A stretch of 64,000 bases of DNA from Malacoraja senta (lineage: Eukaryota): the NCBI GenBank assembly GCA_038087875.1, contig JAXLNO010004298.1:1-64000 (forward strand), given 5' to 3'. Position 1 is the first letter of the stretch; every line of letters begins with the position of its first letter. A model generated the notes under the pieces. That model searched no databases. It was not told where the DNA came from and saw nothing but the letters and a program-made list of their open reading frames with translations. Positions 45,861-64,000 of the stretch are shown here, in pieces. A program made the translations under genes and the position numbers.

Positions 45861-45955
45861 TCGCCCTGCCTCTGTCTCTGTTTTTCTGTCTCTATGACCC
45901 GACGAATCCATGTCCCTACGAGTCTCTGACCTCATCTCCCTGTGACTCTGAGTAG

Positions 45956-46237: not shown

Positions 46238-48142
46238 GTACGTCAGTGAATGGAAATCATTCCACCTTCGGTTGACACAGGGTCGCAACAACTGCCTCTC
46301 GAGGGTAGACAAAAATGCTGAAGAAACTCAGCGGGTGAGGCAGCATCTATGGAACAAAGGAAATAGGTGCCGTTTCGGGTCGAGACCCTTCTTCAGACTG
46401 ATGTGAGGGTGGGGGGGGGGAGGGCGGAGACAGTGGGCTGACGGAGAGCTGGGAAGGGGACGAGAAAGCAGGGACTACCTGAAATTGGAGAAGTCAATGT
46501 TCATACCGCTGAGGTGCAAACTGCTCAAGCGAAATATGAGGTGCTGCTCCTCAGTATAACTGCCTCTCGAGTATAATTATCTTAATTTAAATGATAATCT
46601 CAGATAGGATACGATACAACTTTATTTACTCCAGGAGGGAAATTGATCTGCCAACAGTCCTAAAAGCACAAAATACATTAAACATGAAAATAGACAATAA
46701 ACAATAGACAATAGGTGCAGGAGGAGGCCATTCGGCCCTTCTAGCCAGCACCGCCATTCAATGTGTTCATGGCTGATCATCCCCAAACAGTACCCCGTTC
46801 CTGCCTTCTCCCCATATCCCCTGACTCCGCTATCTTTAAGAGCTCTATCTAGCTCTCTCTTGAAAGTATCCAGAGAACCGGCCACCACCGCCCTCTGAGA
46901 CAGAGAATTCCACAGACACTTTCTCTGTGTGAAAAAATGTTTCCTCATCTCCATTCTAAATGGCTTACCCCTTATTCTTAAACTGTGGCCCCTGGTTCTG
47001 GACTCCCCCAACATCGGGAAATAAAGTGACGAGTGGAAAGGATTGGGGATGTGCAAAGATTGGGGAGGTGTGGGGGGGGGGGGGGGAGGGGAGAGGAGTC
47101 AGTCTCAGTCTACCCCACGACAGAAGGGGGAGGAGTTGTGCACAGAAACTGGATAGACTCGGCTTGTACTCGCTGGAATTTAGAAGATTGAGGGGGGATC
47201 TTATAGAAACGTACAAAATTCTTAAGGGGTTGGACAGGCTAGATGCAGGAAGATTGTTCCCGATGTTGGGGAAGTCCAGAACAAGGGGTCACAGTTTAAG
47301 GATAAGGGGGAAGTCTTTTTGGACCGAGATGAGAAAATTTGTTTTCACACAGAGAGTGGTGAATCTGTGGGATTCTCTGCCACAGAAAGTAGTTGAGGCC
47401 AGTTCATTGGCTATATTTAAGAGGGAGTTAGATGTGGCCCTTGTGGCTAAAGGGATCGTGGGGTATGGAGAGAAGGCAGGTACAGGATACTGAGTTGGAT
47501 GATCAGCCATGATCATATTGAATGGCTCGAAGGGCCGAATGGCCTACTCCTGCACCTATTTTCTATGTTTCTATGTTTTAATGAAACATAGACAATAGGT
47601 GCAGGATTAGACCATTCGGCCCATCGAGCCAGCACTGCCATTTAATATGATCATGGCTGATCATCTAAAATAAGTACCCACTTCCTGCTTTTTCTCCCAT
47701 ATCCCTTGATTCCTTAAGGGAACCTCAGGAGATTCTGTCAGGATTCAAGAGATTACTTAAGGAATCAAGAGATTCCTTGATGAATCAAGGATTCCTTAAA
47801 GAATCAAGGGCTATGCACCCATAGGCAGCACCCCTAGTCGGGATCGAACCCGGGTCTCTGGCGCTGTGAGGCAGCAACTCTATGGCTGCGCCACCGTGAC
47901 CGCTCCTGAGTACTCCAGTTAATTCGGAAGATAGGCACAAAATGCTGGAGTAACTCAGCGGGACAGGCAGCATCCCTGGAGGATAGGAATGGTTGACGTT
48001 TCGGGTCGAGAGCCTTCTTCAGACTCCTTTTTCCCCAGAGGCGCTGCCTGTCCCGCTAGGTCACTACAGTTTTTTGTGTCTATCTTCGGTGTAAGCCAGT
48101 TCCTTCCTGCACACTTTGTTTAATATGTTGCCTTTCCTCCAG

Positions 48143-48484
48143 GGGAACCCCATGTTATTTCGCCAAGAAGTCTCTTCACCGGCGTAGTGGGTGATGATGT
48201 CCTCTTGGAGTGCAGATTGCAACCAGTTACAGCCCTGAAGGAATTGGAGGTGAGATGGTTTACATCGAGGTCGCTGGTACATTTGTACACCGGCGGTCAG
48301 GATCGACCTGACGCGCAGGACGAGGCTTATCGAGGGAGGACGGAACTGTTTCCGGAAGAGTTTCACCGCGGAAATGCCTCACTTAAACTGAAGCGGATTA
48401 AAGTCTCAGATGTTGGCATGTACACCTGTTCCACCTCGACCAACACCTCCCACCTGCAGATGGCGCTGTATCTGGATGTTGATG
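48143..48484 (+). CDS. BTN/B7-like IgV exon V3 (342 nt)
   Basis: Duplicate of V2 with 7 substitutions; intact splice sites. Confidence 0.92.
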
Positions 48485-48977
48485 GTGAGTCCCACTTGTG
48501 GTAAACCTTTTTGGGCCCCATACCTCGGGTCGCCAACTGTTCCATATTAGCCGGGACATCCCGTATACTGAGCTAAATTGGTTTGTCCTGTACGGGACCG
48601 CTCTTGTCGTGTACTTGACTGCAAGTACTCGGGTCGAGGGGACTGTCGGGTCGGAGCGACGCGTCCGGCCCCGTGTCACCTGTCCCGACGTAGTGCAGCC
48701 CATGGAGTGCAGCAGCAGCGCCTCGCCGGTGGCCCTGTCGTTCGGTGGCCCAGTCAGCTGTCCGAACCTTCGGACCTTCGCTTACCACCGACACCACCAC
48801 CACCCCTCCTTCTCGTGGCCGATCATCGGTTCGTGAGTTGGATGGGGTGCCGGACTTTGCATGCGATGTCGCGTGCCCGGGCCAAAACTCCTCAGCTGGC
48901 CCGCCGGCTGGGCTTTGTGTGCAGTCCAGCACTCAGGGCCAACTCATCATTCACCCAGCCACAGCCGAGTCGGTCAA

Positions 48978-50362
48978 CCATATAACCATATAACCATATA
49001 ACAATTACAGCACGGAAACAGGCCATCTCGACCCTTCTAGTCCGTGCCGAACACGTATTCTCCCCTAGTCCCATATACCTGCGATCAGACCATAACCCTC
49101 CATTCCTTTCCCGTCCATATAACTATCCAATTTATTTTTAAATGATAAAAACGAACCTGCCTCCACCACCTTCACTGGAAGCTCATTCCACACAGCCACC
49201 ACTCTCTGAGTAAAGAAGTTCCCCCTCATGTTACCCCTAAACTTCTGTCCCTTAATTCTCAAGTCATGTCCCCTTGTTTGAATCTTCCCTACTCTCAGTG
49301 GGAAAAGCTTATCCACGTCAACTCTGTCTATCCCTCTCATCATTTTAAAGACCTCTATCAAGTCCCCCCTTAACCTTCTGCGCTCCAAAGAATAAAGCCC
49401 TAACTTGTTCAACCTTTCTCTGTAACTTAGTTGCTGAAACCCAGGCAACATTCTAGTAAATCTCCTCTGTACTCTCTCTATTTTGTTGACATCCTTCCTA
49501 TAATTAGGCGACCAAAATTGTACACCATACTCCAGAATTGGCCTCACCAATGCCTTGTACAATTTTAACAATACATCCCAACTTCTATACTCAATGCTCT
49601 GATTTATAAAAGCCAGCACACCAAAAGCTTTCTTTACCACCCTATCTACATGAGATTCCACTTTCAGGGAACTGTGCACAGTTATTCCAAGGTCCCTCTG
49701 TTCACCTGCATTCTTCAATTCCCTACCATTTACCATGTACGTCCTATTTTGATTTGTCCTGCCAAGATGTAGCACCTCACACTTATCAGCATTAAACTCC
49801 ATCTACCATCTTTCAGCCCACTCTTCCAACCGGCATAAATCTCTCTGTAGACTTTGAAAATCTACTTCATTATCCACAGCCCCACCTATCTTAGTATCAT
49901 CTGCATACTTACTAATCCAATTTACCACACCATCATCCAGATCATTGATGTACATGACAAACAACAGTGGACCCAACACAGATCCCTGTGGCACCCCACT
50001 AGTCACCGGCCTCCAACCTGACAAACAACCATCCACCATTACTCTCTGGCATCTCCCATTCAGCCACTGTTGAATCCATCTTGCTACTCCACCATTAATA
50101 CCCAACCATTGAACATTCTTAACCAACCTTCCGTGAGGAACCTTGTCAAAGGTCTTACTGAAGTCCATATATACAACATCCACGGCTTTACCCTCATCAA
50201 TTTCCCGAGTAACCTCTTAAAAAAATTCAAGAAGATTAGTCAAACATGACCTTCCAGGCACAAATCCATGTTGACTGTTCCTAATCAGCCCCTGTTTATC
50301 CAGATGCTTATATATATTATCTCTAAGTATCCTTTCCATTAATTTGCCCACCACTGACGTCA
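48978..50362 (-). mobile_element. CR1 LINE (duplicate of 43905-45290)
   Basis: ORFs 49065..49802 and 49803..50183. Confidence 0.93.
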
Positions 50363-50797
50363 ACGAATTGCCGTCGGGAATTTATCCCGCATTTTGACCT
50401 TTTGTCCCTTATTTGGAAGTGAGAAAGTTGTCAACCCTACATCAAACGCTCATTGTATGTTAACCCAATCATTCCGGAGATCATTCTCGTAAACTGGCTT
50501 AATTCTGTTCTTATAAATTATGGATTTGTTAATCCTCAGGAGATTTTGTGCCTCTGTGTCTCTGTCGCTGTGTTTCTGTGTCTGTATCTTAGTGTCTTTT
50601 TGTCTCTGTGTCTTTGTCTATAATTTAATTTTAGAGATACAGCGCAGAAACAGGCCCTTCGGCCCACCAGGTCCACGCCGACCAGCGATCCCCGCACATT
50701 AACATCATCCTACACCCACTGGGGATATTTTTTTTACATTTACCAAGCCAACTAACCTACAAACCTATAGGTTTTGGAGTGTGGGAGGAAACTGAAG

Positions 50798-50997
50798 NNN
50801 NNNNNNNNNNNNNNNNNNNNNNNNNNNNNNNNNNNNNNNNNNNNNNNNNNNNNNNNNNNNNNNNNNNNNNNNNNNNNNNNNNNNNNNNNNNNNNNNNNNN
50901 NNNNNNNNNNNNNNNNNNNNNNNNNNNNNNNNNNNNNNNNNNNNNNNNNNNNNNNNNNNNNNNNNNNNNNNNNNNNNNNNNNNNNNNNNNNNNNNNN
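50798..50997. other. Assembly gap (200 N)
   Basis: Run of N. Confidence 1.
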
Positions 50998-51141
50998 AAA
51001 GATGTAAAGACAACCACATATACACACACATATACTCACACATATACTCACGTACAAGATCAGACTTTTAATAAGTAAATGATGATTAGGACTTGTTGAT
51101 CATCTAAGTGATGGACCTAAAGTTTTCTGATTGTATTACAG

Positions 51142-51242
51142 TTCATTGTTGGTGAGGATGGATCCTGTGGTGTAATCTACGAACAATCTTGTGGTGAGGG
51201 TCCACCCATTGCTGCCATATTGGACCACGTTCTAGATTATTG
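51142..51242 (+). CDS. CRAT-like: Carnitine O-acetyltransferase-like exon (101 nt); catalytic His position is Gln
   Basis: tacag|FIVGEDGSCGVIYEQSCGEGPPIAAILDHVLDY|gtaaga, versus CRAT FIVAEDGSCGLVYEHAAAEGPP. Confidence 0.92.
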
Positions 51243-51319
51243 GTAAGATTTTCTTCTTATAGAGTCCGCACACAAGATTAGAAGCTGTTCAGCCAGGCAC
51301 ATCTCGGCATCTGCTACAA

Positions 51320-51720
51320 TGGAGGGGATCTTATTGAAACATATAAGACTATTAAGGGTTTGGACATGCGAGAGGCAGGAAACATGTTCCCGATGTTGGG
51401 GGAGTCCAGAACCAGGGGCCACAGTTTAAGAATAAAGGGCAAGCCATTTAGAACGGAGATGAGGAAACACTTTTTCACACAGAGAGTTGTGAGTCTGTGG
51501 AATTCTCTGCCTCAGAGGGCGGTGGAGGCCGGTTCTCTGGATACTTTCAAGAGAGAGCTAGATAGGGCTCTTGAAGATAGCGGAGTCGGGGGATATGGGG
51601 AGAAGGCTGGAACGGGGTACTGATTGTGGATGATCAGCCATGATCACATTGAATGGCGGTGCTGGCTTGAAGGGCCAAATGGCCTACTCCTACACGTATT
51701 GTCTATTGTCTACCACTGCG
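51320..51720 (+). mobile_element. CR1 3' end
   Basis: ORF 51360..51623. Confidence 0.85.
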
Positions 51721-52114
51721 CGGACGCAGTGGGGCTGAAGGCCCTGTTTCCGCGCTGTATCAATAAACTAAATTGGTCACCTTTTCCATCTTGCATGTAT
51801 AATTGTAACTCTTTCAAAAAAATGGTGCACTGCACATTGAATATAGAAAACTTATATATGTAGAAAAATACCACCAAGATAAAAAGACAAAAAGAAAAAG
51901 AAAAAAGGAAAAAACAATACCCAGCTAAACTAAAGGAAAAAAAATGGAAAAAAATAAAAAAAATAAAAATAAAAACAAAATAAACAAAAACAAAGCAAAG
52001 CAAAACAGAATCTGAACTGAGAATTTCATCAATTTAAATCTGTGAAGTTTAAATATGGTTTAATAAGTATCATCCCTGATTCAACATCTTTACTTCATAC
52101 TTTGCCTTGTGTAG

Positions 52115-52234
52115 CAAGGACCCGGATACAGTTCGAGCTCCAATGATTCCTCTGCCGCTACCCAAGAAACTTTATTTTTACATCACTCCAGAGATAAAGT
52201 GGGATATTGAGCACGCAAAACGGAACCTGGACAT
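52115..52234 (+). CDS. CRAT-like: CRAT-like exon (120 nt)
   Basis: gtag|KDPDTVRAPMIPLPLPKKLYFYITPEIKWDIEHAKRNLD|gtgagt. Confidence 0.92.
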
Positions 52235-52328
52235 GTGAGTATTATTGTGGCTACTTGTGTGAATCAGCTCGACTACATACAGGTGTCTAACAAAGGCCCA
52301 GTATTTAACTCCTAAAGTATGTCAGTCA

Positions 52329-53005
52329 TAGGGTTGCCAACTGTCCCGTATTAGCCGGGACATTTCAAGAGAGAGTCGCTTTCAAGAGAGAGCTAGATAG
52401 GGCTCTTAAAAATAGCGGAGTCAGGGGATATGGGGAGAAGGCAGGAATGGGGTACTGATTGGGGATGATCAGCCATGATCACATTGAATGGCGGTGCTGG
52501 CTCGAAGGGCCTATTGGCCTACTATTGTCTATTGTCTATTGACATCCTGTATTTTGGGCTAAATTGGTTTGTCCCGCACGGGACCGCCCTTGTCCCGTAT
52601 TTGACTGCTACTACTCGGGTCGAGGGGACTGTCGGGTCGGAGCGCCGCGTCTGGCCCCGCCTCACCCGTCCCAACGTAGTGCAGCCCATGGAGTGCAGCA
52701 GCAGCGCCTCGCCGGTGGCCCCATTGGTCGGTCGGCAGCCCGGCCAGATGTCCGACCTTCGGACCTTCGCTTACCACCACCACCCCTCCTTTTCATGGCC
52801 GATCATCGGTTCATGAGTTGGATGGGGCGCCGGACTTTGCGGCCCCCGGGCCAAAACTCCTCAGCTGGCCCGCCGACTGGGCTTTGTGTGTAGTCGGTGG
52901 GCCTCGGCCAGCCACGGCCGAGTCGGGCAACGAATTGCCGTCTGGGAATTTGTCCCGTATTTTGACCTTTTGCCCCGTATTTGGGAGTGAGAAAGTTGGC
53001 AACCC
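52329..53005. mobile_element. hAT-like MITE with a nested CR1 tail
   Basis: tagggttgcca at 52329, tggcaacccta at about 52997; CR1 tail at 52365-52545. Confidence 0.75.
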
Positions 53006-53114
53006 TAATGAGTCATTCAGCAGAAACTACATCATCATAGAAAATAGAAAGGTGTAGCACAGGAACAGGCCCTTCGGCCCACATTGTCTGTACCGAACAT
53101 GATGCCAAGACCAA

Positions 53115-53415
53115 GGGGCGGCACAGAGGCGCAACAGTAGAATCGCAGCATCACAGCGGCAGAGACACAGGTTCAATCCAGACTATGGGTGCTGTCTGTG
53201 AGGAGTTTGTACATTCTCCCTGTGACCAGCGTAGGTTTTCTCCGGTTTCCTCCCGCACTCCAAAGTCATGCAGGTGTGTATGTTAATTGGCTCTGGTATA
53301 ATTGTTCAATTGTCCCAAGTGTGTTGGTTAGTGCTAGTGTATGGGGTGATGGCTGGTTGGCGGGGACTCGGTGGGCTGAAGGGCCTGTTTCCGCGCTGTA
53401 TCTCTAAACTCTAAA
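53115..53415 (+). mobile_element. HE1-like V-SINE
   Basis: SINE head, V-domain-like body and ctaaact tail. Confidence 0.7.
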
Positions 53416-53439
53416 ATTGAAACGATGTCTCTGTTCCAG

Positions 53440-53562
53440 TTTAGTCAACGACCTGGACATCAGCTGCTTCACGTACAGAAACTTTGGAAAAGACTTCCCC
53501 AAAAAACATGGCATAAGCCCGGACTCGTTTGTCCAGATGGCTCTTCAGTTGGCCTACTTCAG
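53440..53562 (+). CDS. CRAT-like: CRAT-like exon (123 nt)
   Basis: ttccag|VNDLDISCFTYRNFGKDFPKKHGISPDSFVQMALQLAYF|gtatgt. Confidence 0.95.
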
Positions 53563-53577
53563 GTATGTACTCTGGGA

Positions 53578-54475
53578 AGGGTTGCCAACTCTCTCACTCC
53601 CAAATAAGGGACAGAAGGTCAAAATACGGGACAAATTCCCAACGGCAATTCATTGACTGACTCGGCCGTGGCTGGGTGAATGATGAGTTGGCCCGAGTGC
53701 TGGACTGCACACAAAGACCAGCCGGCTGGGCCAGCTGAGAAGTTTTGGCCCGGGGGCCGCGCGCAAAGTCCAGCACTCCATCCAACTCATGAACCGATGA
53801 TCGACCATGAGAAGGAAGGGTGGTGGTGGTGTCGGCGGTAAGCGAAGGTCCGAAGGTCCGACAGCTTGCCGGGCTGCCGACCGACGGGGCCACGGGCGAG
53901 GCGCTGCTGCTGCTGCAATCCATGGGCTGTACTACGTCGGGACGGGTGAGGCGGGGCCGGACGCGGTGCTCTGACCCGACAGTCCCCTCGATCAGTCAAA
54001 TACAGGGCAAGGGCAGTCCCGTACGGGACAAACAAATTTAGCCCAAAATATAGATACATAGATACATAGAAAATAGGTGCAGGAGTAGGCCATTCGGCCC
54101 TTCGAGCCTGCACCGTCATTCAATATGATCATGGCTGATCATCCAACTCAGTATCCCGTACCTGCCTTCTCTCCATACCCCCTGTTCCCTTTAGCCACAA
54201 GGGCCACATCTAACTCCCTCTTAAATATAGCCAATGAACTGGCCTCAACTACCCTCTGTGGCAGAGAGTTCCAGAGATTCACCACTCTCTGTGTGAAAAA
54301 GTTTTTCCTCATCTCGGTCTTAAAGGATTTCCCTTTATCCTTAAGCTGTGACCCCTTGTCCTGGACTTCCCCAACATCGGGAACAATCTTCCTGCATCTA
54401 GCCTGTCCAACCCCATAAGAATTTTGTACGTTTCTATAAGATCCCCTCTCAATCTCCTAAATTCTAGCGAGATAT
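53578..54475. mobile_element. hAT-like MITE followed by a CR1 3' end (minus)
   Basis: agggttgcca at 53578; CR1 tail (ATAGAAA/ATAGATAC) from about 54050. Confidence 0.75.
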
Positions 54476-54824
54476 GGGATGTCCCGGCTCTGTGTTCGAA
54501 TATTTGTCCCCTCAGCTTGTAACATTCCTCTTATTATCCAGGCTGCACAAACTCCCGAGGTAGAGAATTCCAGGGTTTCACCACTCTCTGTGAAAATAAA
54601 GTTCTACGCAGCACTGTTTTAAAATGAGTGGTCCTAATATTGTTGTAGATCAAACAGTATTGCTGATTTGATCCATCTGGTTTTGCTGCTGATGACCTGA
54701 TCCATAATCCATATCACGTTTCCCATACCACTGCCAGCTCGTGCATGCACAGCCATGTGGAGTTTTAGATTTAACTTACATTCAGAGCCTCCAGTACTCA
54801 TCTCGATGGCCTCTGTATGTATAT

Positions 54825-55320
54825 ATTCTTGCTATTGAGGGAGTGCAGCGTAGGTTCACAAGGTTAATTCCCAGAATGGTGGGACTGTCATATGCTGAGA
54901 GAATGGAGCGGCTGGGCTTGTATACTCTGGAATTTAGAAGGATGAGAGGGGATCCTATTGAGACATAGAAGATTATTAAGGGTTTGGACACGCTGGAGGC
55001 AGGAAACATGTTCCCGATGTTGGGGGAGTCCAGAACCAGGGGCCACAGTTTAAGAATAAGGGGTAAGCCATTTAGAACGGAGATGAGGAAACACTTTTTC
55101 ACACACAGAGTGGTGGGTCTGTGGAATTCTCTGCCTCAGAGGGCGGTGGAGGCTGGTTCTCTGGATACATTCAAGAGAGAGCTAGATAGGGCTCTTAAAG
55201 AGGGATATGGGGAGAAGGCAGGAACGGGGTACTGATTGGAGATGATCAGCCATGATCACATTGAATGGTGGTGCTGGCTCGAAGGGCCAAATGGCCTATT
55301 GTCTATTGTCTATTGTGTAC
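54825..55320 (+). mobile_element. CR1 3' end
   Basis: ORFs 54741..54968 and 54984..55235. Confidence 0.85.
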
Positions 55321-55425
55321 AAATTAAAGTACTTTTGAGTTGGAGTGAAGCTGGGATCACTGCCTTATGGCCCTTTTATAGTCTTTTCCCCTATTATATT
55401 CTTTTCTCTTTGCGACCACTTTTAG

Positions 55426-55561
55426 AATGTACAAGGAGCTGTGTTCTGCTTGCGAGACTGTTTCACTGAGGAACTTTCATTTGGGGCGCACAGATGTGGT
55501 ACGATCCTCGTCCACAGATTCCTTGGAGTTTGTGGAAAGCATGGACAATGAAAAAATTGAG
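55426..55561 (+). CDS. CRAT-like: CRAT-like exon (136 nt)
   Basis: tttag|MYKELCSACETVSLRNFHLGRTDVVRSSSTDSLEFVESMDNEKIE|gtaatt. Confidence 0.93.
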
Positions 55562-55619
55562 GTAATTCGTCCTTGGAAGTTCACAAGAAATATAACGTCT
55601 CCCCAACAACTAACTTGAC

Positions 55620-56530
55620 GAGGATGTTGCCAGGACTCGAGGGTGTGAGCTACAGGGAGAGGTTGAGCAGGCTGTGGACTCTATTCCTTGGAGCGCAGGA
55701 GGATGAGGGGTGATCTTATAGAGATGTATAAAATCATGAGAGGAATAGATCGTGTTGACGCACACAGTCTCTTGCCCAGAGTAGGCGAATCGAGGACCAG
55801 AGGACATGCAGTACCTTTAAGGTGAAGGGCGAAAGATTTAATAGGAATCTGAGGGGTGACTTTTTCACATAAAGGGTGGTGGGTGTGTGGAACAAGCTGC
55901 CAGAGGACGTAGTTGAGGCTGGGACTATTGCAACAAAAAAAAAACGATTATAAATGTACATGGATAGGACAGGTAGACACAATGCTGGAGTAACTCAGCG
56001 GGACAGGCAGCATCTCTGGAGAGAAGGAATGGGTGACATTTCGGGTCGAGACCCTTCTTCAGACTGAAATTTGGATAGGACAGGTTTGGAGGGATATGGA
56101 GCAAACACAGGCGGGTGGGACTAGTGTAGATGGGGCATGTAGGTCATCGTGGGCAAGTTGGGCCAAATGAGCCTGTTTCCACGCTGTATGACTCGATGAC
56201 TAACATTGTCTATTTTTAAGTCATTGACCATGGTGGCACAGTTGTGAGCTGGCTCACAGCGCCAGATACCGGGTTCGATCCTGACCTCGGGTGCTGTGTG
56301 TGCAGAGTTTGCACGTTCTCCCCGTGACCGGGTGGGTTTTCTCTGGGTGCTCCGGTTTCCTCCCACATCCCGAAGACGTGTGGGTTTGTAGGTTAATTGT
56401 CTCATTTAAATTTCCCCTAGTGTGTAAGATGCGGAACTGGGATAACTTAGAACTAGTGTGAATCGATGGTCGGTGTGGACTTGGTGGGCCGAAGGGCCTG
56501 TTTCCATGCTGTATCTGTAAACTAAACTAA
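55620..56530 (+). mobile_element. CR1 3' end with a Penelope insert, then a V-SINE
   Basis: CR1 at 55620-56200; SINE at 56228-56530. Confidence 0.7.
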
Positions 56531-56680
56531 AGAGGCCAGCATTACTGCTCTGATCAGCTTTTACAGTCAGCAACGAGACATTTAGTTCTAAAACAAATAA
56601 TAGCAAATATTTTTTTTTCCAACAGTATTGCGTTTCACTATAATTAACACTGTATCGTTCCACCCCCCTCACCCTCTCAG

Positions 56681-56743
56681 GCAAACCAGAAGGTTGCGGC
56701 ATTGAGGAGAGCTATTGACTGCCACAGCGCATACACCGACATG
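56681..56743 (+). CDS. CRAT-like: CRAT-like exon (63 nt)
   Basis: ctctcag|ANQKVAALRRAIDCHSAYTDM|gtaagg. Confidence 0.9.
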
Positions 56744-56814
56744 GTAAGGAAAGATCAGGGTGACCTGCACAAAGTGCTGGAGTAACACAACGGATCCGGC
56801 AGTGTCTCTCCAGT

Positions 56815-57325
56815 AGGTTTACAAGGTTAATCCCCGGGATGGCGGGACTGTCATATGCTGAGAGAATTGAGCGGCTGGGCTTGTATACTCTGGAGTTTAG
56901 AAGGATGAGAGGGAATCTTATTGAAACATATAAAGTTATTAAGGGTTTGGACACGCTAGAGGCAGGAAATGTGTTCCCGATGTTGGGGGAGTCCAGAACC
57001 AGGGGAATGTGAGCAGGGAAAGATTTAATGTGAACCTGTGCATAATTAAGAATAGGGAGTAAGACATTTAGAACGGAGATGAGAAAACACTTTTTCACAC
57101 AGAGTTGTGAGTTTATGGAATTCTCTGCCTCAGAGGCCGGTTCTCTGGATACTTTCAATAGAGAGCTTGATAGGGTTCTTAAAGATAGCGGAGTCAGGGG
57201 ATATGGGGAGAAGGCAGGAACGGGGTACTGATTGGGGATGATCAGCCATGATCACATTGAATGGCTGTGCTGGCTCGAAGGGCTGAATGGCCTACTCCTG
57301 CACCTATTGTCTATTGCCTATTGTC
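56815..57325 (+). mobile_element. CR1 3' end
   Basis: ttaatccccgggatggcgggactgtcatatg...attgtctattg. Confidence 0.85.
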
Positions 57326-57386
57326 AAAATCTTGTATAAACCTGCAACTGCGGCCCTCAAATAAATCTGTTTTGTTCTCCTCACAG

Positions 57387-57524
57387 ACACTGAAAGGCTT
57401 GGCAATTGACAGGCACCTGTTGGGCCTGAAGCTGCAGGCTATCGAGGAAGGGCTGAGCGTGCCAGAAATCTTCATGGACACATCGTTCGCCGTGGCCACT
57501 CACTGGAGGCTCTCGACGGGACAG
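57387..57524 (+). CDS. CRAT-like: CRAT-like exon (138 nt)
   Basis: cacag|TLKGLAIDRHLLGLKLQAIEEGLSVPEIFMDTSFAVATHWRLSTGQ|gtcaag. Confidence 0.95.
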
Positions 57525-57555
57525 GTCAAGCCATGTCAACTTTATTTGTCACGAA

Positions 57556-57785
57556 AGGGCCCGTCCCACTTGCCGAATTCTTTTCGGCGACTGCTGGCGT
57601 CGTATCAGTGTCGCCGAAAGATTTTGAACATTTCAAAATCCAGCAACGACAAAAAGAATGTTGCGACACTTGAAAAATCACCTCGTGTCAATACGTAATC
57701 GCGCCACAAATTTTTCGGTGGCCTGATACGTCAGTCAATGATGCCGGCAGTCGCCGAAAAAAATCACCAAGTGGGACAGGCCCAT
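57556..57785. mobile_element. Harbinger-like MITE
   Basis: gggcccgtcccactt ... aagtgggacaggccc TIRs. Confidence 0.7.
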
Positions 57786-57829
57786 TGCACATACAAGATG
57801 TACAGTGAAATGAAACAATGAGATGTACA

Positions 57830-59085
57830 ATGCCTGCGGTGCTGGCTCGAAGGGTCAAATGGCCTACTGCTGCAACTATTGTCTATTGATTGTGCAAAAG
57901 AACAGAACAGAACCGAACCAGTATTTACATTAAAAAAAAAAAAGATTTTAAGTATTTACAGTATTTATGCCCTAGTGAGATCAGAGTTTACAGTCCTGAT
58001 GGCCTGTGGGAAGAAACTCCGTCTCATTCTCTCTGTTTTCGCAGAGTGACAGCGGAGGCGCTTGCCTGACCGTAGCAGCTGGAACAGTCTGTTGCTGGGG
58101 TGGTAGGGGTCCCCCATAATGTTGCTGGCTCTGGATCTGCACCTCCTGGTGTATAGGTCCTGCAGGGGGGGGGGCAGTGTAGTTCCCGTGGTGTGTTCGG
58201 CCGAACGCACTACTCTCTGCAGAGCCTTCCTGTCCCATCTGCCTAACCAGATAGAGATGTTTTCGGTCAGGATACTTTCTACAGCACCAGAGTAGAAGGA
58301 TTGAAAGATTCTCAGAGAAACTCCTGGTTCAGGACTCCCCCAACATTGGGAACATGTTTCCTGCCTCTAGCGTGTCCAAACCCTTAATTTGGTCCATATC
58401 CCTCCAAACTCGTCACTTGCATCTGGGGTTTTTCGTTGCAATTTGGTAAAAAGAAATGGTGCTGAATTCAGGTGCGGTACCTAATTATATGTTGAACGTC
58501 CTTCTGCAGTTGTACAGGGCCCTAGTATGACCACACCTGGAGTATTGTGTGCAGTTTTGGTCGCCTAATTTGAGGAAGGACATTCTTGCTATTGAGGGTG
58601 TGCAGCGTAGGTTTACAAGGTTGATTCCCGGGATGGCGGGACTGTCATATGCTGAGAGAATTGAACGGCTGGGCTTGTATACGCTGGAATTTAGAAGGAT
58701 GAGAGGGAATCTTATTGAAACATATAAGATTATTAAGGGTTTGGACACGCTAGAGGCAGGAAACATGTTCCGAATGTTGGAGAAGTCCAGAACCAGGGCC
58801 ACAGTTTAATAATAAGGGGTAAGCCATTTAGAACGGAGATGAGGAAACACACTTTCACACAGAGTTGTGAGTCTGTGGAATTCTCTGCCGAGAGGGTGGT
58901 GGAGGCCGGTTCTCTGGATACTTTCAGGAGAGAGCGAGATAGGGCTCTTAAAGACAGCGGAGTCGGGGGATATGGGGAGAAGGCAGGAACGGGGTAATGA
59001 TTGTGGATGATCAGCCGTGATCACATTGAATGGCGGTGCTGGCTCGAAGGGCCGAATGGCCTACTCCTGCACCTATTGTCTATTG
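57830..59085. mobile_element. Rex1 fragment (minus, 57830-58320) and CR1 fragments (58320-59085)
   Basis: ORF 57965..58210 LFQLLRSGKRLR...SFFPQAIR; ORF 58549..58809. Confidence 0.8.
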
Positions 59086-59124
59086 AATGGGTGTTCTTAA
59101 TGTGAGACCCTTTCCCTTTCACAG

Positions 59125-59340
59125 GTCTCCGCCAGAGCTGACTGTGTGATGTGCTTCGGCCCAATGGAGCCAGACGGATATGGGGTCTGGTACAACCCTT
59201 TGGAAGATCACATCAATTTCTCCGTCTCTGCCTTCAACTGCTGTGAGGAGACGAACGCGGAATGGTTCTCCAAGTCGCTGGAGACGGCCCTCTCCGACAT
59301 GCACAGCTTGGTCTTGGGAGCAACCGGTCAGACCGCGTAG
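59125..59340 (+). CDS. CRAT-like: CRAT-like terminal exon (216 nt)
   Basis: cacag|VSARADCVMCFGPMEPDGYGVWYNPLEDHINFSVSAFNCCEETNA...GATGQTA*. Confidence 0.95.
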   Translation, partial: VSARADCVMCFGPMEPDGYGVWYNPLEDHINFSVSAFNCCEETNAEWFSKSLETALSDMHSLVLGATGQTA

Positions 59341-60169
59341 GGGGACCGGTCAGGAAGAGGCCGTCCGCTATACAAAGAGAGCAATGAGAGGTCTCCTCTG
59401 CAATATGAACTAATATGATCGTCAGGCTGATGGATGTTAGTTCCAGATGATCCTGCAACTGAACTGATAGTTGGTGCAAACACACACACAACAATGCAGG
59501 AAGATGTTTACAACTACAAATCTGCTTTCATAGGTCAAAGTGTAATACATTTGTTCCCCCAATATGATTCTTCCTCTTGCCTATGGCGTGCACAGCCTAA
59601 AGTTGTCAGACAACTTGTTCTATTTGATCTTACTTGATTGTGCACGCCAGGTTGATTGCATTCGTCGAAACAAGGCGGACCACGTGAAGGTTTGAATCCC
59701 CCCCCCCCCCCCCCCAATACGAATGATGAACCCGAAGTCGTCAAAGGTATTTTATCTGTTACAAATGAGGTGTGCTCGTGAGGTTGCGAGAGATTTATTA
59801 ACTAGATTGGACTTCCTTTCATAAGTGGCAACTTCTCCGGCAACTCGCCTGATTCCACTGCATAGGACACTACACGCGTGCAATATACCTGTTACAACCA
59901 TGCATTAGCTGCAATTATTTGCGATTTATCGTCTTTGCACAGGCATTTTCGCATTCTCTAATGGCCTCTTTCATTCAGAGTCCAGTGAAGCTCTAATTTA
60001 GCATTGTTCCCCAATCGATAACACTCATATCTGGAATCATTTCTATCTCTATCACCACCCTTCACTCCAAAGATCTGGCCTGTTTCCCATTTAATAATGT
60101 TCATTATCTTGAACTATTTCTATCATTAATTACCGTGCATCGTTCGTCCCTTCTTCAGACTTGCTAAAG

Positions 60170-60660
60170 ATATCTCGTTTTCACACCTTTCCCTTCCATA
60201 TCTCTGGTTTCCCTCTCCCCTGACTCTCAGTCTGAAGAAGGGTCTAGACCCGAAATGTCGCCCGTTCCTTCTATCCAGAGATGCCGCCTATCCCGCTGAG
60301 TCACTCCAGCATTTTTTGTGTGTCTATGTTCGATTTTGAACCAGCATCTGCAGTTCCTTCCTGCACATTTTGTCTGGAGGGAAGGAATGGGTGACGTCTC
60401 GGGTCGAGACCCTTCAGACTAGGTCTGCTCAGGGTCGGGACCCGAATTGTCACCTATTCCTTCTCTCCAGTGACGCTGCCTGTCCCGCTGAGTTACTCCA
60501 GCATTTCCTGTCTATCTGCCCCAGCAGAGCTGGCCGTGGCAGAGCAAGGATGGACCGGGTGCGACGGGCCACAGTGCACGTCGGTCCCGCTGAGTTACTC
60601 CAGCATTTTGTGTCTATCTTCAGCGTAAACCAGCATCTGCAGTTCCTTCCTCCTTACTGC
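60170..60660. mobile_element. Cluster of Penelope-like terminal repeats
   Basis: Three units; core CTGAAGAagggtctagacccGAAA at 60232-60255. Confidence 0.6.
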
Positions 60661-60819
60661 AAAGATCTAGTGTGTTCCCTAATCAATAATGTTTATATCT
60701 TGAATGCATTTGATATCCATCGCTAATCACTACCCATTGTTCATCCCTTAGAATAAGGATCTGGTCTGTTCCCTAATCAATGATGCTCATATGTTGATTC
60801 ATTTCTATGTCTACCAACA

Positions 60820-61130
60820 CTGTGTGCAGCGGTAGAACTATTGCCTTACAGCATCAGAGACCCGGGTTCGATCCTGACTACGGGTGCTGTCTGTACGGAG
60901 TTTATACGTTCTCCCCGTGACCAGTGTGGGTGTTCTCCGAGATCTTTGGTTTCCAAACCACACTCCAAAGACGTCCAGGGCTTGTAGTTTAATTGGCTCA
61001 GTGTATATGTAAAATGGTCACTGGCCTGTGTACGGTAGTGTTAATGTGTGGTGATGGCAGGTCAGTGCGGACCTGGTGGGCCAAAGGGCCTGTTTTCTTC
61101 ACTGTATCTCTAAATTGAACTAAGCTAAAC
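60820..61130 (+). mobile_element. HE1-like V-SINE
   Basis: gcagcggtagaact...gacccgggttcgatcctgactacgggtgctgtctgtacggag. Confidence 0.8.
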
Positions 61131-61614
61131 CACCACCAACCATTGTTCATCCCTTGGTATAAGGATCTGGATTGTGACAAATTGTCACAATCCCTTGGTA
61201 TAAGGATCTGGATTGTCACAACTGTTACTTTGTAGATTAAACAGCTTCCAATATTCATCTTGTGCATCTTGGCTTAGATTTTTCAAGTTCCATCTCAAAG
61301 ATGGTGGAAAATAGTCGCCATTCGCAAAGATAAATATTTCATTTACTTTGCTTGTTGGAGATTTCCTGCAAATATTCGAGTTGAATGCCAGATCGAGCTC
61401 TCTTTGTCTTTAAGGTTTGTGAATTTTATTAGCAAGAAATGGTGAGATGTAACAGCCTTTAAAATAAATTACTTCATGTAACTGATCTTTTATTGCTACT
61501 AATTTCAACAATTTTGTTAAAAAATTAAGTTTTGTTGCTTGAGGCATTAATATGCAGAGGGATCTTGGGGGTCCAAGTCCATAACTCCCTGAAAGTGACA
61601 ACTTTGAGGTTTAG

Positions 61615-62310
61615 CTGGGAAGGGTGCAGAGAAGATTTCCGAGGATGTTGCTGGGACTCGAAGGCCTGAGCTGCAGGGAGAGTTTGAGCATGCCAGGACT
61701 TTGTTCCTTGGAGTGCAGGAGGAAGTGGGGTGATCTTATAGAGGTGAGGGGAATAGATTTTTGGGACGCGCTAGAGGCAGGAAACATGTTCCCGATGTTG
61801 GGGGAGTCCAGAACCAGGGGCCACACTGTTTAAGAATAAGGGGTAAGCGATTTAGAACGGAGGTGAAGAAACACTTTTTCACACAGGGAGTTGTGAGTCT
61901 GTGGAGTTCTCTGCCTCAGAGGGCGTTGGAGGCCGATTTTTTAGGTGCTTTCAAGAGAGAGCTAGATAGGGCTCTTAAAGATAGCAGAGTCAGGGGATAT
62001 GGGGAGAAGGCAGGAACGGGGTACTGATTGTGGATGATCACATTGAATGGCGGTGCTGGCTCGAATAGCCTACTCCTGCACCTATTGTCTATTGAATCTG
62101 AGAGGTAGCTTTTTCACACAAGGCGTGGTGGGTGTATGGAACAAGCTGCCAGAGGAGGTAGTTGAGGCTGGGACTATCCCAACGTTTAAGAAACAGATGG
62201 TTTGGAGGGATATGGACCCAAGCTCCGCTCTAAGATATTTGATTGCGACCAAGCGCAGGCAAGTGGGACTAGTGTAGCTGGGACATGTTGGCCGGTGTGG
62301 GCAGATTAAG
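61615..62310 (+). mobile_element. Mosaic of CR1 3' fragments
   Basis: ORFs 61624..61833, 61761..62027 and 62047..62277. Confidence 0.8.
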
Positions 62311-62984
62311 CCGGACTCGGCTTAATCTAACCCAGAATTAATCTCTTTTTTAGTTTCACTCTCTCCGCTCCGCCCATGCATGCTCCATTTTTGCGGAAAC
62401 GCAACTCTGTGTTAATCTCCTCACCCGACGGTCGCCCTTCTCGTCCCGTGAGGGTCTCGGTTGAAGAAGCGGTCCCTCTGAGCCCGGTTACAGACTCGGG
62501 GGGTAGGGACCCCCGAACGAGGGAGGAGCTGAAGCGGCTTGACCAGGTGAGCGACGCTCGGGGACAAAGCGATCGCTGCCCCCTGTTTGCCGGCGAGGAG
62601 TCGGTGGAAGGGACCCCCCCCCCCCCCCCCGTTGCCCCTGCCCGGTCGGTCCACAGCCCCCGCGGGGTGCGCCACGGGTCGTTGCCCCTTGAGAGAATCT
62701 GGAGGGACACAAGGAACTTTTACAACTTGCCAACATGTCCCAGCTACACTAGTCCCACCTGCCTGCGCTTGGTCCATATCCCTGCTGCAAACCTGTCCTG
62801 TCCATGTACCTGTCTGTTTCTTTAACGTTGGGATATAGTCCCAGCCACAATGAATGGCGGTGCGGGCTCCAAGGGCCAAATGGCCTCCTGCACCTATTTT
62901 CGATGTTTGTCCCAACTTCCATATCAATACACGGACATGACTCCAGCACTTTGTGTCTTTTCCTGGCAAGCGATAGGAGGTGTG

Positions 62985-63138
62985 GGTGGGGGTGATGGTG
63001 GGGTGAGGGTATTGGTTGGGGTGAGGGTGGGAGTGGGGGTGGGGTTATGGGTGAGGGTGCGGGTGAGTGAGGGTGGGGCTGGGAGTGTGGGTGAGGGTGA
63101 GGGTGGGGGTGAAGGTGGGGCATGAGGGTGGGGGGGGG
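62985..63138. repeat. G-rich (GGGTGA)-like low-complexity repeat
   Basis: Many GGG runs with TGA/TG spacers. Confidence 0.8.
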
Positions 63139-63239
63139 GAGTTGATTAATAAATGGGAAGAAGAAAGACCCGAAATGAAAAAGACAGAGGGTGAAATAAG
63201 ATATGGGAAGAAGAGGTGTGGGTTGTGAACCCAGCGAGA

Positions 63240-63750
63240 GTCAAGTCAACTTTATTTGACACATATACAAGATGTACAGTGAAATGAAAGTGGCAATGCC
63301 TGCGGATTGTGCAAAAAACAACAGAACAACAGAACAGAACTGAACCAGTATTTACATTTAAATAAAAAGACACAACAGTATTTACGCCCTGGTGAGATCA
63401 GAGTTTACAGTCCTGATGGCCTGTGGGAAGAAACTCCGTCTCATCCTCTCTGTTTTCGCAGCGTGACAGCGGAGGCGCTTGCCTGACCGTAGCAGCTGGA
63501 ACAGTCCGTTGCTGGGGTGGTAGGGGTCCCCCATAATGTTGCTGGCTCTGGATCTGCACCTCCTGGTGTATAGGTCCTGCAGGGGGGTGAGTGTAGTTCC
63601 CATGGTGCATTCGGCCGAACGCACTACTCTCTGCAGAGCCTTCCTGTCCTGGGCAGAGCTGTTCCCAAACCAGATCGAGATGTTGCCGTACAGGATGCTT
63701 TCTACAGCACCAGAGTAGAAGGACTGAAGGATCCTCGGAGAGACTTATCC
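63240..63750 (-). mobile_element. Rex1/Babar 3' fragment
   Basis: ORF 63382..63624; tail tcaagtcaactttatt. Confidence 0.82.
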
Positions 63751-63899
63751 TCAGAAAGGATTATAGGTGGAAGGGGGTCAGGAGGTGGTGGGAGAGGAAG
63801 GTGAGAAATGGGTTCAAATCCAGGTGAAGCACAGAGAAAAGAGGAGGGGGGAGGGGGGGGAGGTGGGAGGAAGAAATGGGAGATATTTGTTGGCTAATT

Positions 63900-64000
63900 T
63901 CATAGAACACTTGTGCTTGGCCCACCAAGACCTGCTGGATCTCCCGGTTGCCAGCCATTTTAACTCCCCTTCCCATTCCCACATTGACCTTTCTGTCCTG
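63900..64000 (+). mobile_element. Penelope-like GIY-YIG fragment running off the window
   Basis: Plus strand reads PVASHFNSPSHSHIDLSVL. Confidence 0.55.

What the first reader, a model, noticed from the sequence alone, without database searches (positions are those of the whole stretch)
51142..59340. Intact CRAT-like gene with a remodelled active site: candidate pseudoenzyme
Seen: six consecutive exons with canonical splice sites, CRAT-like sizes (101/120/123/136/63/138/216 pattern) and no stops or frameshifts. However, YEH becomes YEQ (CAA, 51184-51186), TYESAS becomes ACETVS (TGC, 51 nt-scale site 55451-55453) and STS becomes STG (57519-57521). RTD, DRHL and VM.F are retained. Known: in carnitine acyltransferases His343 is the catalytic base, Tyr452/Ser454/Thr465/Arg518 bind carnitine, and Ser554 of the STS motif stabilises the transition state (human/mouse numbering from memory). 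Inference: three independent catalytic or substrate residues changed in an otherwise conserved frame fit a catalytically dead acyl-CoA or carnitine sensor or scaffold, or a changed chemistry, better than random decay. This may be an undescribed function in an immune-gene neighbourhood.
Basis: partly seen in the sequence, partly recalled or inferred. Interest (0 to 1): 0.75.

Follow-up and report, generated by a model that had tools for sequence, protein, structure and literature searches.

The report
CRAT paralogue without its catalytic histidine
The window holds the last seven exons of a skate's cratb gene, an old and strongly conserved sister of carnitine acetyltransferase that is expressed in related skates and lost its catalytic histidine and two other key residues before sharks and bony fishes split, so it probably no longer works as that enzyme, although databases and papers treat it as one.

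Summary
Seven AG/GT-bounded exons (51142-59340, +) give an open 897-nt frame of 298 codons plus a stop. Against solved CrAT structures it reads YEQ for YEH (His343), ACETVS for TYESAS (Tyr452Cys, Ser454Thr) and STG for STS (Ser554Gly).

It is neither a private oddity nor decay. The stretch is exons 8-14 of 14 of the skate orthologue of "carnitine O-acetyltransferase b/-like" (cratb). A 200-N gap cuts it 144 nt upstream of exon 8, and codons 1-333 are not in the window.

The cratb clade is monophyletic and sister to true CRAT. It occurs in elasmobranchs, coelacanth, lungfish, amphibians, squamates, turtles and ray-finned fishes. Across it:
- Gly554 is invariant.
- Tyr452 is almost never kept.
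- Gln343 is ancestral (74 of 92 sequences), with at least four reversions to His, for example in Cypriniformes.
- No member ends in the peroxisomal -[AS]KL.

CoA-binding Lys419 and Lys423, Thr465 and Arg518 are kept, as is the CrAT fold. dN/dS among skates is 0.04-0.05. Intronless transcripts exist in related skates.

Best reading: a mitochondrial CoA/acyl-CoA-binding pseudoenzyme, or less likely an enzyme with altered chemistry. The butyrophilin-like neighbours look incidental. No paper in the searchable library mentions the lost histidine.

The parts
50798..50997 (.). 200-N assembly gap that cuts the gene inside the intron before exon 8. The seven 5' coding exons (codons 1-333) are missing from the window.
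   Evidence: In Amblyraja (L002) exon 7 lies 1.7 kb upstream of exon 8.
51142..51242 (+). cratb exon 8 (101 nt). It holds the active-site strand ...GVIYEQSCGEGPP, with Gln (CAA 51184-51186) in place of the catalytic His343. Glu347 is kept.
52115..52234 (+). cratb exon 9 (120 nt)
53440..53562 (+). cratb exon 10 (123 nt). It holds FGKDFPKKHGISPD, which keeps the CoA 3'-phosphate lysines Lys419 and Lys423, and Asp430.
55426..55561 (+). cratb exon 11 (136 nt). It reads ACETVS in place of TYESAS: Tyr452>Cys (TGC 55451-55453) and Ser454>Thr, with Glu453 kept. The RTD motif with Thr465 is kept.
56681..56743 (+). cratb exon 12 (63 nt)
57387..57524 (+). cratb exon 13 (138 nt). DRHLLGL keeps Arg518. STGQ stands in place of STSQ: Ser554>Gly (GGA 57519-57521).
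59125..59340 (+). cratb exon 14 (216 nt, stop TAG 59338-59340). VMCFGP keeps Met564 and Phe566. The C-terminus ...GQTA has no peroxisomal -[AS]KL signal.
59341..59500 (+). Start of the 3' UTR; it can be aligned with the 3' UTR of the related skate transcript L001.
   Evidence: printed UTRs; collinear with L002

Best explanation
The stretch is exons 8-14 of the 14 coding exons of the skate orthologue of cratb ('carnitine O-acetyltransferase b/-like'). cratb is a paralogue of CRAT that arose before the split of cartilaginous and bony vertebrates. Shown: the protein keeps the full CrAT two-domain fold and the CoA-binding lysines Lys419 and Lys423. It keeps Asp430 and Glu453 in skates, Thr465, Arg518 and the small acyl pocket (Met564, Phe566). 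It has lost the general base His343 (now Gln), Ser554 of the STS motif (now Gly, in every clade member) and the carnitine-carboxylate ligand Tyr452 (now Cys). It has also lost the peroxisomal C-terminal signal. Its N-terminus is basic and free of acidic residues. It is under strong purifying selection and is transcribed and correctly spliced in related skates. Inferred: the protein is imported into mitochondria, still binds CoA or short acyl-CoA (and perhaps an anionic ligand at Arg518), and does not transfer acetyl groups to carnitine at a useful rate. On this reading it acts as a non-catalytic binder, sensor or regulator of the acetyl-CoA/CoA pool, in the way CPT1C is thought to have become a sensor within the same family. 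The identity and clade-wide remodelling part of this statement is about 0.97 certain. The 'catalytically dead binder' part carries the confidence given.
For: Identity:
- The window protein nests among skate cratb sequences, 98% identical to Amblyraja and Leucoraja. The cratb clade of 34 rows has SH-aLRT 100; the CRAT clade has 91.
- Window 51027-64000 is collinear with the A. radiata cratb locus.
- NCBI names include 'carnitine O-acetyltransferase b [Leucoraja erinacea]'.

Remodelled site:
- The substitutions align residue for residue with solved CrAT.
- In 32 cratb versus 17 CRAT sequences, position 343 is Q29/A1/H2 versus H17. Position 452 is C25/A3/T3/S1 versus Y17. Position 554 is G32 versus S17.
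- K419, K423, T465, W102, Y107, E347, T553 and Q555 are 32/32 kept; R518 and M564 are 31/32.
- A wider census of 92 non-redundant cratb sequences gives Q74, H13, A2, P1 and 2 not read at position 343.
- No cratb sequence ends in -[AS]KL, whereas nearly all vertebrate CRAT sequences do.

Constraint:
- Window versus L001: 30 synonymous and 6 non-synonymous differences, omega 0.05.
- Window versus Amblyraja: 30 and 5, omega 0.042.
- Shark-gar identity is 64% for cratb.

Expression:
- Logan contig L001 (2207 nt) carries an intronless 631-codon ORF.
- Many further 2.1-2.3 kb Logan contigs carry the same protein cluster.

Fold:
- The AlphaFold model of Leucoraja cratb has pLDDT 81 and pTM 0.83.
- Its best PDB match is human CrAT 1nm8: TM 0.90/0.96, rmsd 1.8 A.
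- The Pfam PF00755 match has E 1e-191.

Role of residues:
- H343 is the general base, K419/K423 bind the CoA 3'-phosphate, and D430-E453 shape the pantetheine site (PMC11852590).
- The catalytic His is crucial in CPT1 (PMC6092487).
- From my own memory, unverified here: Ser554 stabilises the transition state, Tyr452/Ser454/Thr465/Arg518 bind the carnitine carboxylate, and a His-to-Gln change inactivates choline acetyltransferase.
Against: No activity or binding measurement exists, so loss of catalysis is inferred from residues alone. Most of the substrate tunnel is conserved (Thr465, Arg518, Phe566, Met564, Trp102, Tyr107, Glu347), which would also fit a working enzyme with a changed acceptor. 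Position 343 has returned to His at least four times (Cypriniformes, Paramormyrops, Aldrovandia and one unnamed transcript). This could mean catalysis is still selectable. Position 343 also tolerates Ala and Pro, and position 452 tolerates Cys, Ala, Thr, Ser and Asn, so neither new residue is itself essential. Mitochondrial targeting rests only on N-terminal composition and low pLDDT for residues 1-33. The 5' half of the gene is not in the window.
Confidence: 0.55

Rival explanations
1. cratb is still an enzyme, but with altered chemistry or a different acceptor. The CoA site and tunnel are used, and the acceptor needs no general base (for example an amine or a thiol) or uses another residue such as the ancestral Cys452. 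Alternatively it hydrolyses acyl-CoA or acylcarnitine.
For: The CoA-binding lysines and most tunnel residues are kept. There are 22 sites fixed differently in cratb and CRAT, and the cratb stem branch is long (0.41 versus 0.09), as expected for a shift of function. Cys452 is present in 25 of 32 sampled members. His has returned repeatedly at position 343. Purifying selection is very strong.
Against: No new His, Asp or Glu candidate base appears among the clade-specific fixed sites. Cys452 is replaced by Ala or Thr in squamates, by Ser in turtles and gar, and by Asn in a frog and a lungfish, so it cannot be a universal nucleophile. Ser554 is gone in all members.
Confidence: 0.3
2. cratb is an ordinary carnitine acetyltransferase, as annotated and as assumed in fish papers, and Gln343 is tolerated.
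For: Databases name it carnitine O-acetyltransferase b. Tilapia papers treat XM_005457163 (cratb) as CAT or as a peroxisome-pathway enzyme (PMC11050330 and PMC11463132). Cypriniform cratb does carry His.
Against: All 63 canonical vertebrate CRAT sequences keep YEH/TYESA/STS, and the invertebrate relatives whose motifs could be read keep His343, Tyr452 and Ser554. Literature identifies the His as the general base. Three catalytic or substrate residues are changed together, and even the His-bearing cratb sequences lack Tyr452 and Ser554.
Confidence: 0.1
3. The window copy is a truncated, decaying duplicate, or the substitutions are assembly or sequencing errors.
For: Only the 3' half of the gene is present, directly after a gap, with unrelated butyrophilin-like and LINE sequence upstream.
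Against: The frame is open, all splice sites are canonical, and omega is 0.04-0.05. The same CAA, TGC and GGA codons occur in Amblyraja genomic DNA and in an independent transcript. Run X19 holds 100% of the sampled exon-8 words, though it may be the assembly's own sample. From 51027 onward the window is collinear with the Amblyraja locus. A 200-N run is probably a conventional scaffold gap of unknown size (my reading, not checked).
Confidence: 0.04

Closest known systems
CRAT / CrAT, carnitine O-acetyltransferase (EC 2.3.1.7; PDB 1nm8, 1ndb, 2h3p)
   Same: Pfam PF00755 over the whole length. About 59-60% identity. Same two-domain fold (TM 0.90/0.96). Same exon pattern. Keeps Lys419, Lys423, Thr465, Arg518, Met564 and Phe566.
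   Different: His343>Gln, Tyr452>Cys, Ser454>Thr and Ser554>Gly. No C-terminal -[AS]KL peroxisomal signal. It forms a separate clade with a long stem branch and evolves faster than CRAT between the same species (for example gar-Anolis identity 67.5% versus 81.3%).
cratb / 'carnitine O-acetyltransferase b' as annotated in fishes (e.g. zebrafish, tilapia, Leucoraja XP_055521752.1)
   Same: This is that gene: the window protein is 98% identical to the Leucoraja and Amblyraja products and syntenic with the Amblyraja locus. Lack of a PTS1 in zebrafish Cratb is already noted (PMC8919083).
   Different: The literature found treats it as a normal acetyltransferase. Loss of the catalytic His, Tyr452 and Ser554 is not mentioned in any paper of the searchable library. 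Cypriniform cratb sequences carry a secondary His, and zebrafish is a cypriniform although its own sequence was not examined here; this may have hidden the change.
CPT1C, the brain paralogue of carnitine palmitoyltransferase 1
   Same: A member of the same superfamily. Its transferase activity is about 100-fold lower than that of other CPT1s (PMC6092487). It is widely thought (my own knowledge) to have moved towards a sensing or regulatory role, which sets a precedent for the function proposed here.
   Different: CPT1C keeps its catalytic His470, is a membrane protein of the ER, and is restricted to mammals. cratb has lost the His, looks like a soluble matrix protein, and was not seen in mammals.
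ChAT, choline O-acetyltransferase
   Same: Next-closest solved fold (TM 0.87, about 40% identity). It shows that acceptor specificity in this family changes through residues at the carnitine-carboxylate site.
   Different: From my own knowledge, ChAT keeps the catalytic His and the Ser of the STS motif, and changes Thr465 and Arg518, which cratb keeps.

Membership tests
Choline/carnitine O-acyltransferase superfamily (Pfam PF00755) | Significant full-length match to the Carn_acyltransf profile | tested here: met
   Leucoraja orthologue E 1e-191 over profile positions 1-573 of 574. Four of the window's own exons each match with E between 5e-5 and 9e-11.
Choline/carnitine O-acyltransferase superfamily (Pfam PF00755) | Two-domain CrAT fold | tested here: met
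   model of orthologue P0284 (98% identical to the window part), pTM 0.83. Best match is 1nm8, TM 0.90/0.96, rmsd 1.8 A.
Catalytically competent carnitine acetyltransferase (EC 2.3.1.7) | Catalytic general base His343 in the YEH motif | tested here: not met
   Gln (CAA) in the window, in Amblyraja, in transcript L001 and in 74 of 92 clade members.
Catalytically competent carnitine acetyltransferase (EC 2.3.1.7) | Ser554 of the STS motif (transition-state stabilisation; role recalled from memory) | tested here: not met
   Gly in the window and in 32 of 32 sampled cratb sequences.
Catalytically competent carnitine acetyltransferase (EC 2.3.1.7) | Carnitine-carboxylate ligands Tyr452, Ser454, Thr465 and Arg518 | tested here: inconclusive
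   Tyr452>Cys and Ser454>Thr, with Thr465 and Arg518 kept.
Catalytically competent carnitine acetyltransferase (EC 2.3.1.7) | CoA-binding residues Lys419, Lys423, Asp430 and Glu453 | tested here: met
   with roles from PMC11852590. All four are present in the window. In teleost cratb, Asp430 is often Asn and Glu453 is often Asp.
Catalytically competent carnitine acetyltransferase (EC 2.3.1.7) | Measured acetyl transfer between CoA and carnitine | not testable with these tools
   Needs a recombinant protein assay.
cratb orthogroup (vertebrate CRAT paralogue) | Falls inside the cratb clade, apart from CRAT, on a tree rooted with invertebrate sequences | tested here: met
   cratb clade SH-aLRT 100. 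The window row sits in a starred 4-row skate set.
cratb orthogroup (vertebrate CRAT paralogue) | Collinear with an annotated cratb locus | tested here: met
   window 51027-64000 matches L002 42743-59431 (A. radiata), with all seven exon boundaries conserved.
cratb orthogroup (vertebrate CRAT paralogue) | Signature of Gly554, non-Tyr452 and no C-terminal -[AS]KL | tested here: met
Pseudoenzyme (conserved, expressed, catalytically inactive homologue) | Loss of essential catalytic residue(s) | tested here: met
Pseudoenzyme (conserved, expressed, catalytically inactive homologue) | Purifying selection and long-term retention | tested here: met
   (omega 0.04-0.05). (retained from elasmobranchs to teleosts, squamates and turtles).
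Pseudoenzyme (conserved, expressed, catalytically inactive homologue) | Expression | tested here: inconclusive
   Spliced full-length transcripts exist in related skates. RNA runs of relatives hold exon words.
Pseudoenzyme (conserved, expressed, catalytically inactive homologue) | Demonstrated lack of catalytic activity | not testable with these tools
   Needs biochemistry.

The most novel reading that the evidence does not exclude
cratb is a mitochondrial pseudoenzyme, or an enzyme of new chemistry, found across jawed vertebrates and about 450 My old. It uses the CrAT fold to bind or sense CoA/acetyl-CoA rather than to make acetylcarnitine. No orthologue was seen in birds, crocodilians or mammals, and the one frog copy seen looks degenerate. 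It has been mistaken for a second carnitine acetyltransferase in fish metabolism studies. The repeated return of His343 in some teleosts would then mark lineages that regained, or re-tuned, catalysis.
Probability: 0.55. Interest if true: 0.7.

Novelty: new variant of a known kind. Interest (0 to 1): 0.6.

Why it matters
Carnitine acetyltransferase buffers the mitochondrial acetyl-CoA/CoA ratio, and its family already contains one member (CPT1C) that drifted from catalysis to sensing. A second, much older and far more widespread case would matter for three reasons.

- Fish, reptile and amphibian studies and pathway annotations that count cratb as CAT activity would need correcting.
- It would give the pseudoenzyme field a clean natural experiment. 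Gln, His, Ala and Pro all occur at the base position, Gly554 is invariant, and there are lineages with secondary His.
- It would raise the question of what mitochondrial function was dispensable in mammals and birds.

It is directly testable with standard assays in species that carry the Gln form (medaka, tilapia, salmon, gar, skate) against cypriniforms that carry His.

Tried and rejected
- 5' half of the gene: tblastn with two full-length skate orthologues against the whole window found nothing upstream of 51124. The gene cannot be called intact here.
I did not resend it. A word-index search shows only that run X19 holds all sampled words of exon 8. X19 may be the assembly's own sample.
- Primary mutagenesis and structure papers on CrAT (S554A, H343): these are not held. 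PMID 16870616 was not found, and searches for His343/Ser554/S554A returned nothing. The roles of Ser554 and Tyr452 therefore rest on my memory plus a review.
- Literature on a catalytically dead CRAT paralogue: searches for cratb, 'carnitine O-acetyltransferase b', '-like' and pseudoenzyme terms found only uses of the name.
- Lineage-specific young duplicate: rejected by the tree and the census.
- Cys452 as a new universal nucleophile: rejected, because squamates, turtles, gar and others lack it.
- A functional link to the immune-type neighbours: no evidence. The V-set/C2-set exons lie across the gap.
- Not attempted: clade-wide codon models, a cyclostome search, and synteny to date the duplication to the 2R events.

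Full report
**1. What is in the sequence**

Positions 51142-59340 (+) hold seven exons of 101, 120, 123, 136, 63, 138 and 216 nt. Each is preceded by AG, and all but the last are followed by GT. Joined, they give 897 nt in one open frame ending in TAG.

Four of the exons each match Pfam PF00755, Carn_acyltransf. Their best hits among solved structures are mouse and human carnitine acetyltransferase. In those alignments:
- YEH reads YEQ (Gln, CAA 51184-51186).
- TYESAS reads ACETVS (Cys, TGC 55451-55453; Ser454 becomes Thr).
- STSQ reads STGQ (Gly, GGA 57519-57521).
- RTD (Thr465), DRHL (Arg518), FGK/FPK (Lys419, Lys423), SPD (Asp430), Glu347 and VMCFGP (Met564, Phe566) are kept.

The exon count is seven, not six.

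**2. The gene is cut by an assembly gap**

Full-length skate orthologues have 631 residues. tblastn places only residues about 334-631 in the window and finds nothing for residues 1-333 in the 50.8 kb upstream.

A 200-N run (50798-50997) lies 144 nt before the first exon. From 51027 to 64000 the window is collinear with the Amblyraja radiata locus L002, positions 42743-59431. In L002 the gene has 14 coding exons over 42 kb, and exon 7 lies 1.7 kb upstream of exon 8.

The window therefore holds exons 8-14. What lies upstream of the gap is unrelated sequence. It contains tandemly duplicated butyrophilin-like IgV exons (Pfam V-set), a butyrophilin-type Ig-C exon (C2-set_3, E 1e-16), and ORFs that read like LINE reverse transcriptase, a reading made by eye. 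'Intact' therefore cannot be affirmed for the whole gene from this window. A scaffold join is the simplest explanation.

In Amblyraja a V-set/C2-set/PRY-SPRY gene lies about 9.5 kb downstream of cratb. Butyrophilin-like neighbours are thus real in skates, but I found nothing that ties them to this gene.

**3. What gene it is**

An exhaustive phmmer search with the last exon, followed by a search with a shark orthologue, recovered a family named 'carnitine O-acetyltransferase-like' or 'carnitine O-acetyltransferase b'. Members include:
- cartilaginous fishes: Chiloscyllium, Stegostoma, Narcine, Mobula, Pristis, Rhinoraja, Leucoraja erinacea (XP_055521752.1) and Amblyraja radiata;
- lobe-finned fishes: Latimeria and Protopterus;
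- amphibians: a caecilian, salamanders and one frog (a LOW QUALITY model);
- reptiles: many squamates and turtles;
- ray-finned fishes: Polypterus, paddlefish, sturgeon, gar, bowfin and many teleosts.

The window's 298 residues differ at five positions from each of Leucoraja and Amblyraja. It comes from another skate.

On a maximum-likelihood tree rooted with invertebrate sequences, the 34 cratb-type rows form one clade (SH-aLRT 100). That clade is sister to the 17 true CRAT rows (SH-aLRT 91). Within it the branching broadly follows the species tree, and its stem is long (0.41 versus 0.09 changes per site). The duplication therefore predates the split of cartilaginous and bony vertebrates.

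Searches seeded with shark and Anolis members returned no bird, crocodilian or mammalian orthologue. The only mammalian hit was a canonical CRAT.

**4. The remodelled site is a clade character, not a local accident**

A motif census separates 63 canonical vertebrate CRAT sequences, all YEH/TYESA/STS and ending in -[AS]KL, from the cratb type. In an alignment numbered on a 626-residue CRAT whose His is residue 343:

| Position | cratb (32 sequences) | CRAT (17 sequences) |
|---|---|---|
| 343 | Gln 29, Ala 1, His 2 | His 17 |
| 452 | Cys 25, Ala 3, Thr 3, Ser 1 | Tyr 17 |
| 554 | Gly 32 | Ser 17 |

Lys419, Lys423, Thr465, Trp102, Tyr107, Glu347, Thr553 and Gln555 are unchanged in all 32 cratb sequences. 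Arg518 and Met564 are unchanged in 31.

Twenty-two positions are fixed differently in the two clades. None of them offers an obvious replacement base.

A wider sample adds nuance. Among 92 non-redundant cratb sequences, position 343 is Gln in 74, His in 13, Ala in 2 and Pro in 1; two could not be read. The His-bearing sequences are all sampled Cypriniformes, Paramormyrops, Aldrovandia and one unnamed transcript. The Ala-bearing ones are a salamander and Mastacembelus; the Pro-bearing one is Prochilodus. The tree needs at least four Gln/His changes. Gln is found in elasmobranchs, coelacanth, lungfish, caecilian, squamates, turtles, bichir, paddlefish, gar, bowfin and most teleosts, so it is the ancestral state and His is secondary.

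Gly554 and the absence of Tyr452 persist even where His has returned. One turtle, Carettochelys, is the only exception at position 452. In teleosts the Asp430-Glu453 pair often becomes Asn and Asp.

**5. Is it alive?**

Transcript contig L001 (Logan, SRR13269368) is 2207 nt long and carries an uninterrupted 631-codon ORF. The window's joined exons align to its last 897 coding nt without a gap. They differ at 36 positions, 30 synonymous and 6 non-synonymous (dN 0.0086, dS 0.172, omega 0.05).

| Comparison | Synonymous | Non-synonymous | omega |
|---|---|---|---|
| Window vs L001 | 30 | 6 | 0.050 |
| Window vs Amblyraja genomic exons | 30 | 5 | 0.042 |
| Amblyraja vs L001 | 16 | 3 | 0.049 |

All three sequences carry the same CAA, TGC and GGA codons, and the splice sites are conserved. 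Many more 2.1-2.3 kb Logan contigs encode the same protein cluster.

Between the same species pairs, cratb is less conserved than CRAT but still clearly constrained. Gar-Anolis identity is 67.5% versus 81.3%, and shark-gar identity is 64% versus 78%.

I could not test expression in the window's own species.

**6. Fold and targeting**

An AlphaFold2 model of the Leucoraja orthologue has mean pLDDT 81 and pTM 0.83. It superposes on human CrAT 1nm8 with TM 0.90/0.96 and rmsd 1.8 A. ChAT, COT and CPT2 follow in that order.

Residues 1-33 are of low confidence. The first 40 residues hold six Arg or Lys and no Asp or Glu. This is typical of a mitochondrial presequence, but that is an inference. No clade member has the peroxisomal -[AS]KL ending. 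The same absence has been noted for zebrafish Cratb (PMC8919083).

**7. How it most likely works**

His343 is the general base that takes the proton from carnitine's 3-OH or from the CoA thiol. Lys419 and Lys423 hold the 3'-phosphate of CoA, and Asp430-Glu453 shape the pantetheine site (PMC11852590). The equivalent His is crucial in CPT1 (PMC6092487).

From my own knowledge, not verified here:
- Ser554 helps stabilise the transition state.
- Tyr452, Ser454 and Thr465 hydrogen-bond the carnitine carboxylate, and Arg518 provides its counter-charge.
- Replacing the catalytic His of choline acetyltransferase with Gln gives inactive enzyme.

The pattern is a preserved CoA site and a preserved fold, with the base and Ser554 gone and the carboxylate site half dismantled. 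This points to a protein that still binds CoA or short acyl-CoA but does not make acetylcarnitine efficiently. I commit to a mitochondrial, non-catalytic CoA/acyl-CoA-binding regulator or sensor (confidence 0.55).

The main rival (0.3) is a working enzyme with a different acceptor or chemistry. The conserved tunnel, the many clade-specific fixed sites and the recurrent return of His all favour it. An ordinary CAT (0.1) and a decaying or artefactual copy (0.04) are unlikely.

**8. Novelty**

The gene is annotated and named. What the searchable literature does not contain is any mention that it lacks the catalytic histidine, Tyr452 and Ser554. Fish papers use it as 'CAT' or place it in the peroxisome pathway.

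It meets the sequence and fold criteria of the carnitine/choline acyltransferase superfamily. It fails two residue criteria for a competent EC 2.3.1.7 enzyme. I therefore file it as a new variant of a known kind. The scan's earlier notes on this genome did not cover it.

Noticed in passing
window 43113-43430, 48187-48504 (+); 46006-46275 (+): Two near-identical butyrophilin-like IgV exons (Pfam V-set, E 4.5e-10) and a butyrophilin-type Ig-C exon (C2-set_3, E 1.2e-16). They sit in a tandem duplication of about 5 kb (43.0-44.7 kb matches 48.1-49.8 kb), upstream of the gap. In Amblyraja a V-set/C2-set/PRY-SPRY gene lies downstream of cratb (L002 from 61980).
   Followed up: partly
window 43991-45109 and 49065-50183 (-): Duplicated ORFs of 245 and 126 aa that read like LINE reverse-transcriptase fragments. 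The 245-aa ORF had no Pfam match at E<=0.01. Each copy sits inside one unit of the butyrophilin-like duplication.
   Followed up: no
window 51319-51708, 54825-55298, 56800-57330, 58498-59085 and many other places; L002 throughout: One interspersed repeat of about 400-600 nt fills the cratb introns in both the window and Amblyraja (85-93% identical copies, both orientations). Many copies end in ...GGCCTACTCCTGCACCTATTGTCTATTG.
   Followed up: no
Proteins P0311, P0313-P0318, P0321, P0324, P0326 (Cypriniformes and unnamed transcripts), P0168 (Paramormyrops), P0179 (Aldrovandia), P0362: cratb in these teleosts carries His again at position 343 while keeping Cys452 and Gly554. At least four independent Gln-to-His changes are needed on the tree. 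The salamander P0277 and Mastacembelus have Ala in that tree, as does axolotl P0310 in the motif census; Prochilodus has Pro.
   Followed up: partly
Protein P0032 (Anomaloglossus baeobatrachus, 'LOW QUALITY PROTEIN'): The only frog cratb-like sequence seen lacks the whole active-site strand, has Gly in place of Arg518 (DGAIL for DRHLL) and sits on a very long branch (1.31). Xenopus returned only CRAT. cratb may be decaying or lost in anurans.
   Followed up: no
Teleost cratb sequences in the alignment: The CoA-site pair Asp430-Glu453 often changes together to Asn430 and Asp453 in teleost cratb (10 of 32 sampled sequences), and Ser454 becomes Met or Ile in some. This looks like coupled remodelling of the pantetheine and carnitine junction.
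   Followed up: partly
Protein P0001 (575 aa, top hit): A carnitine-acyltransferase-like protein in which the segment matching the last exon is repeated five times in tandem. Its source is unknown. It could be a gene-model or assembly artefact, or a real tandem exon amplification.
   Followed up: no
window 21592-22064, 22187-22588: Two further N runs (473 and 402 nt) in the upstream part of the window. The assembly is fragmented here as well.
   Followed up: no
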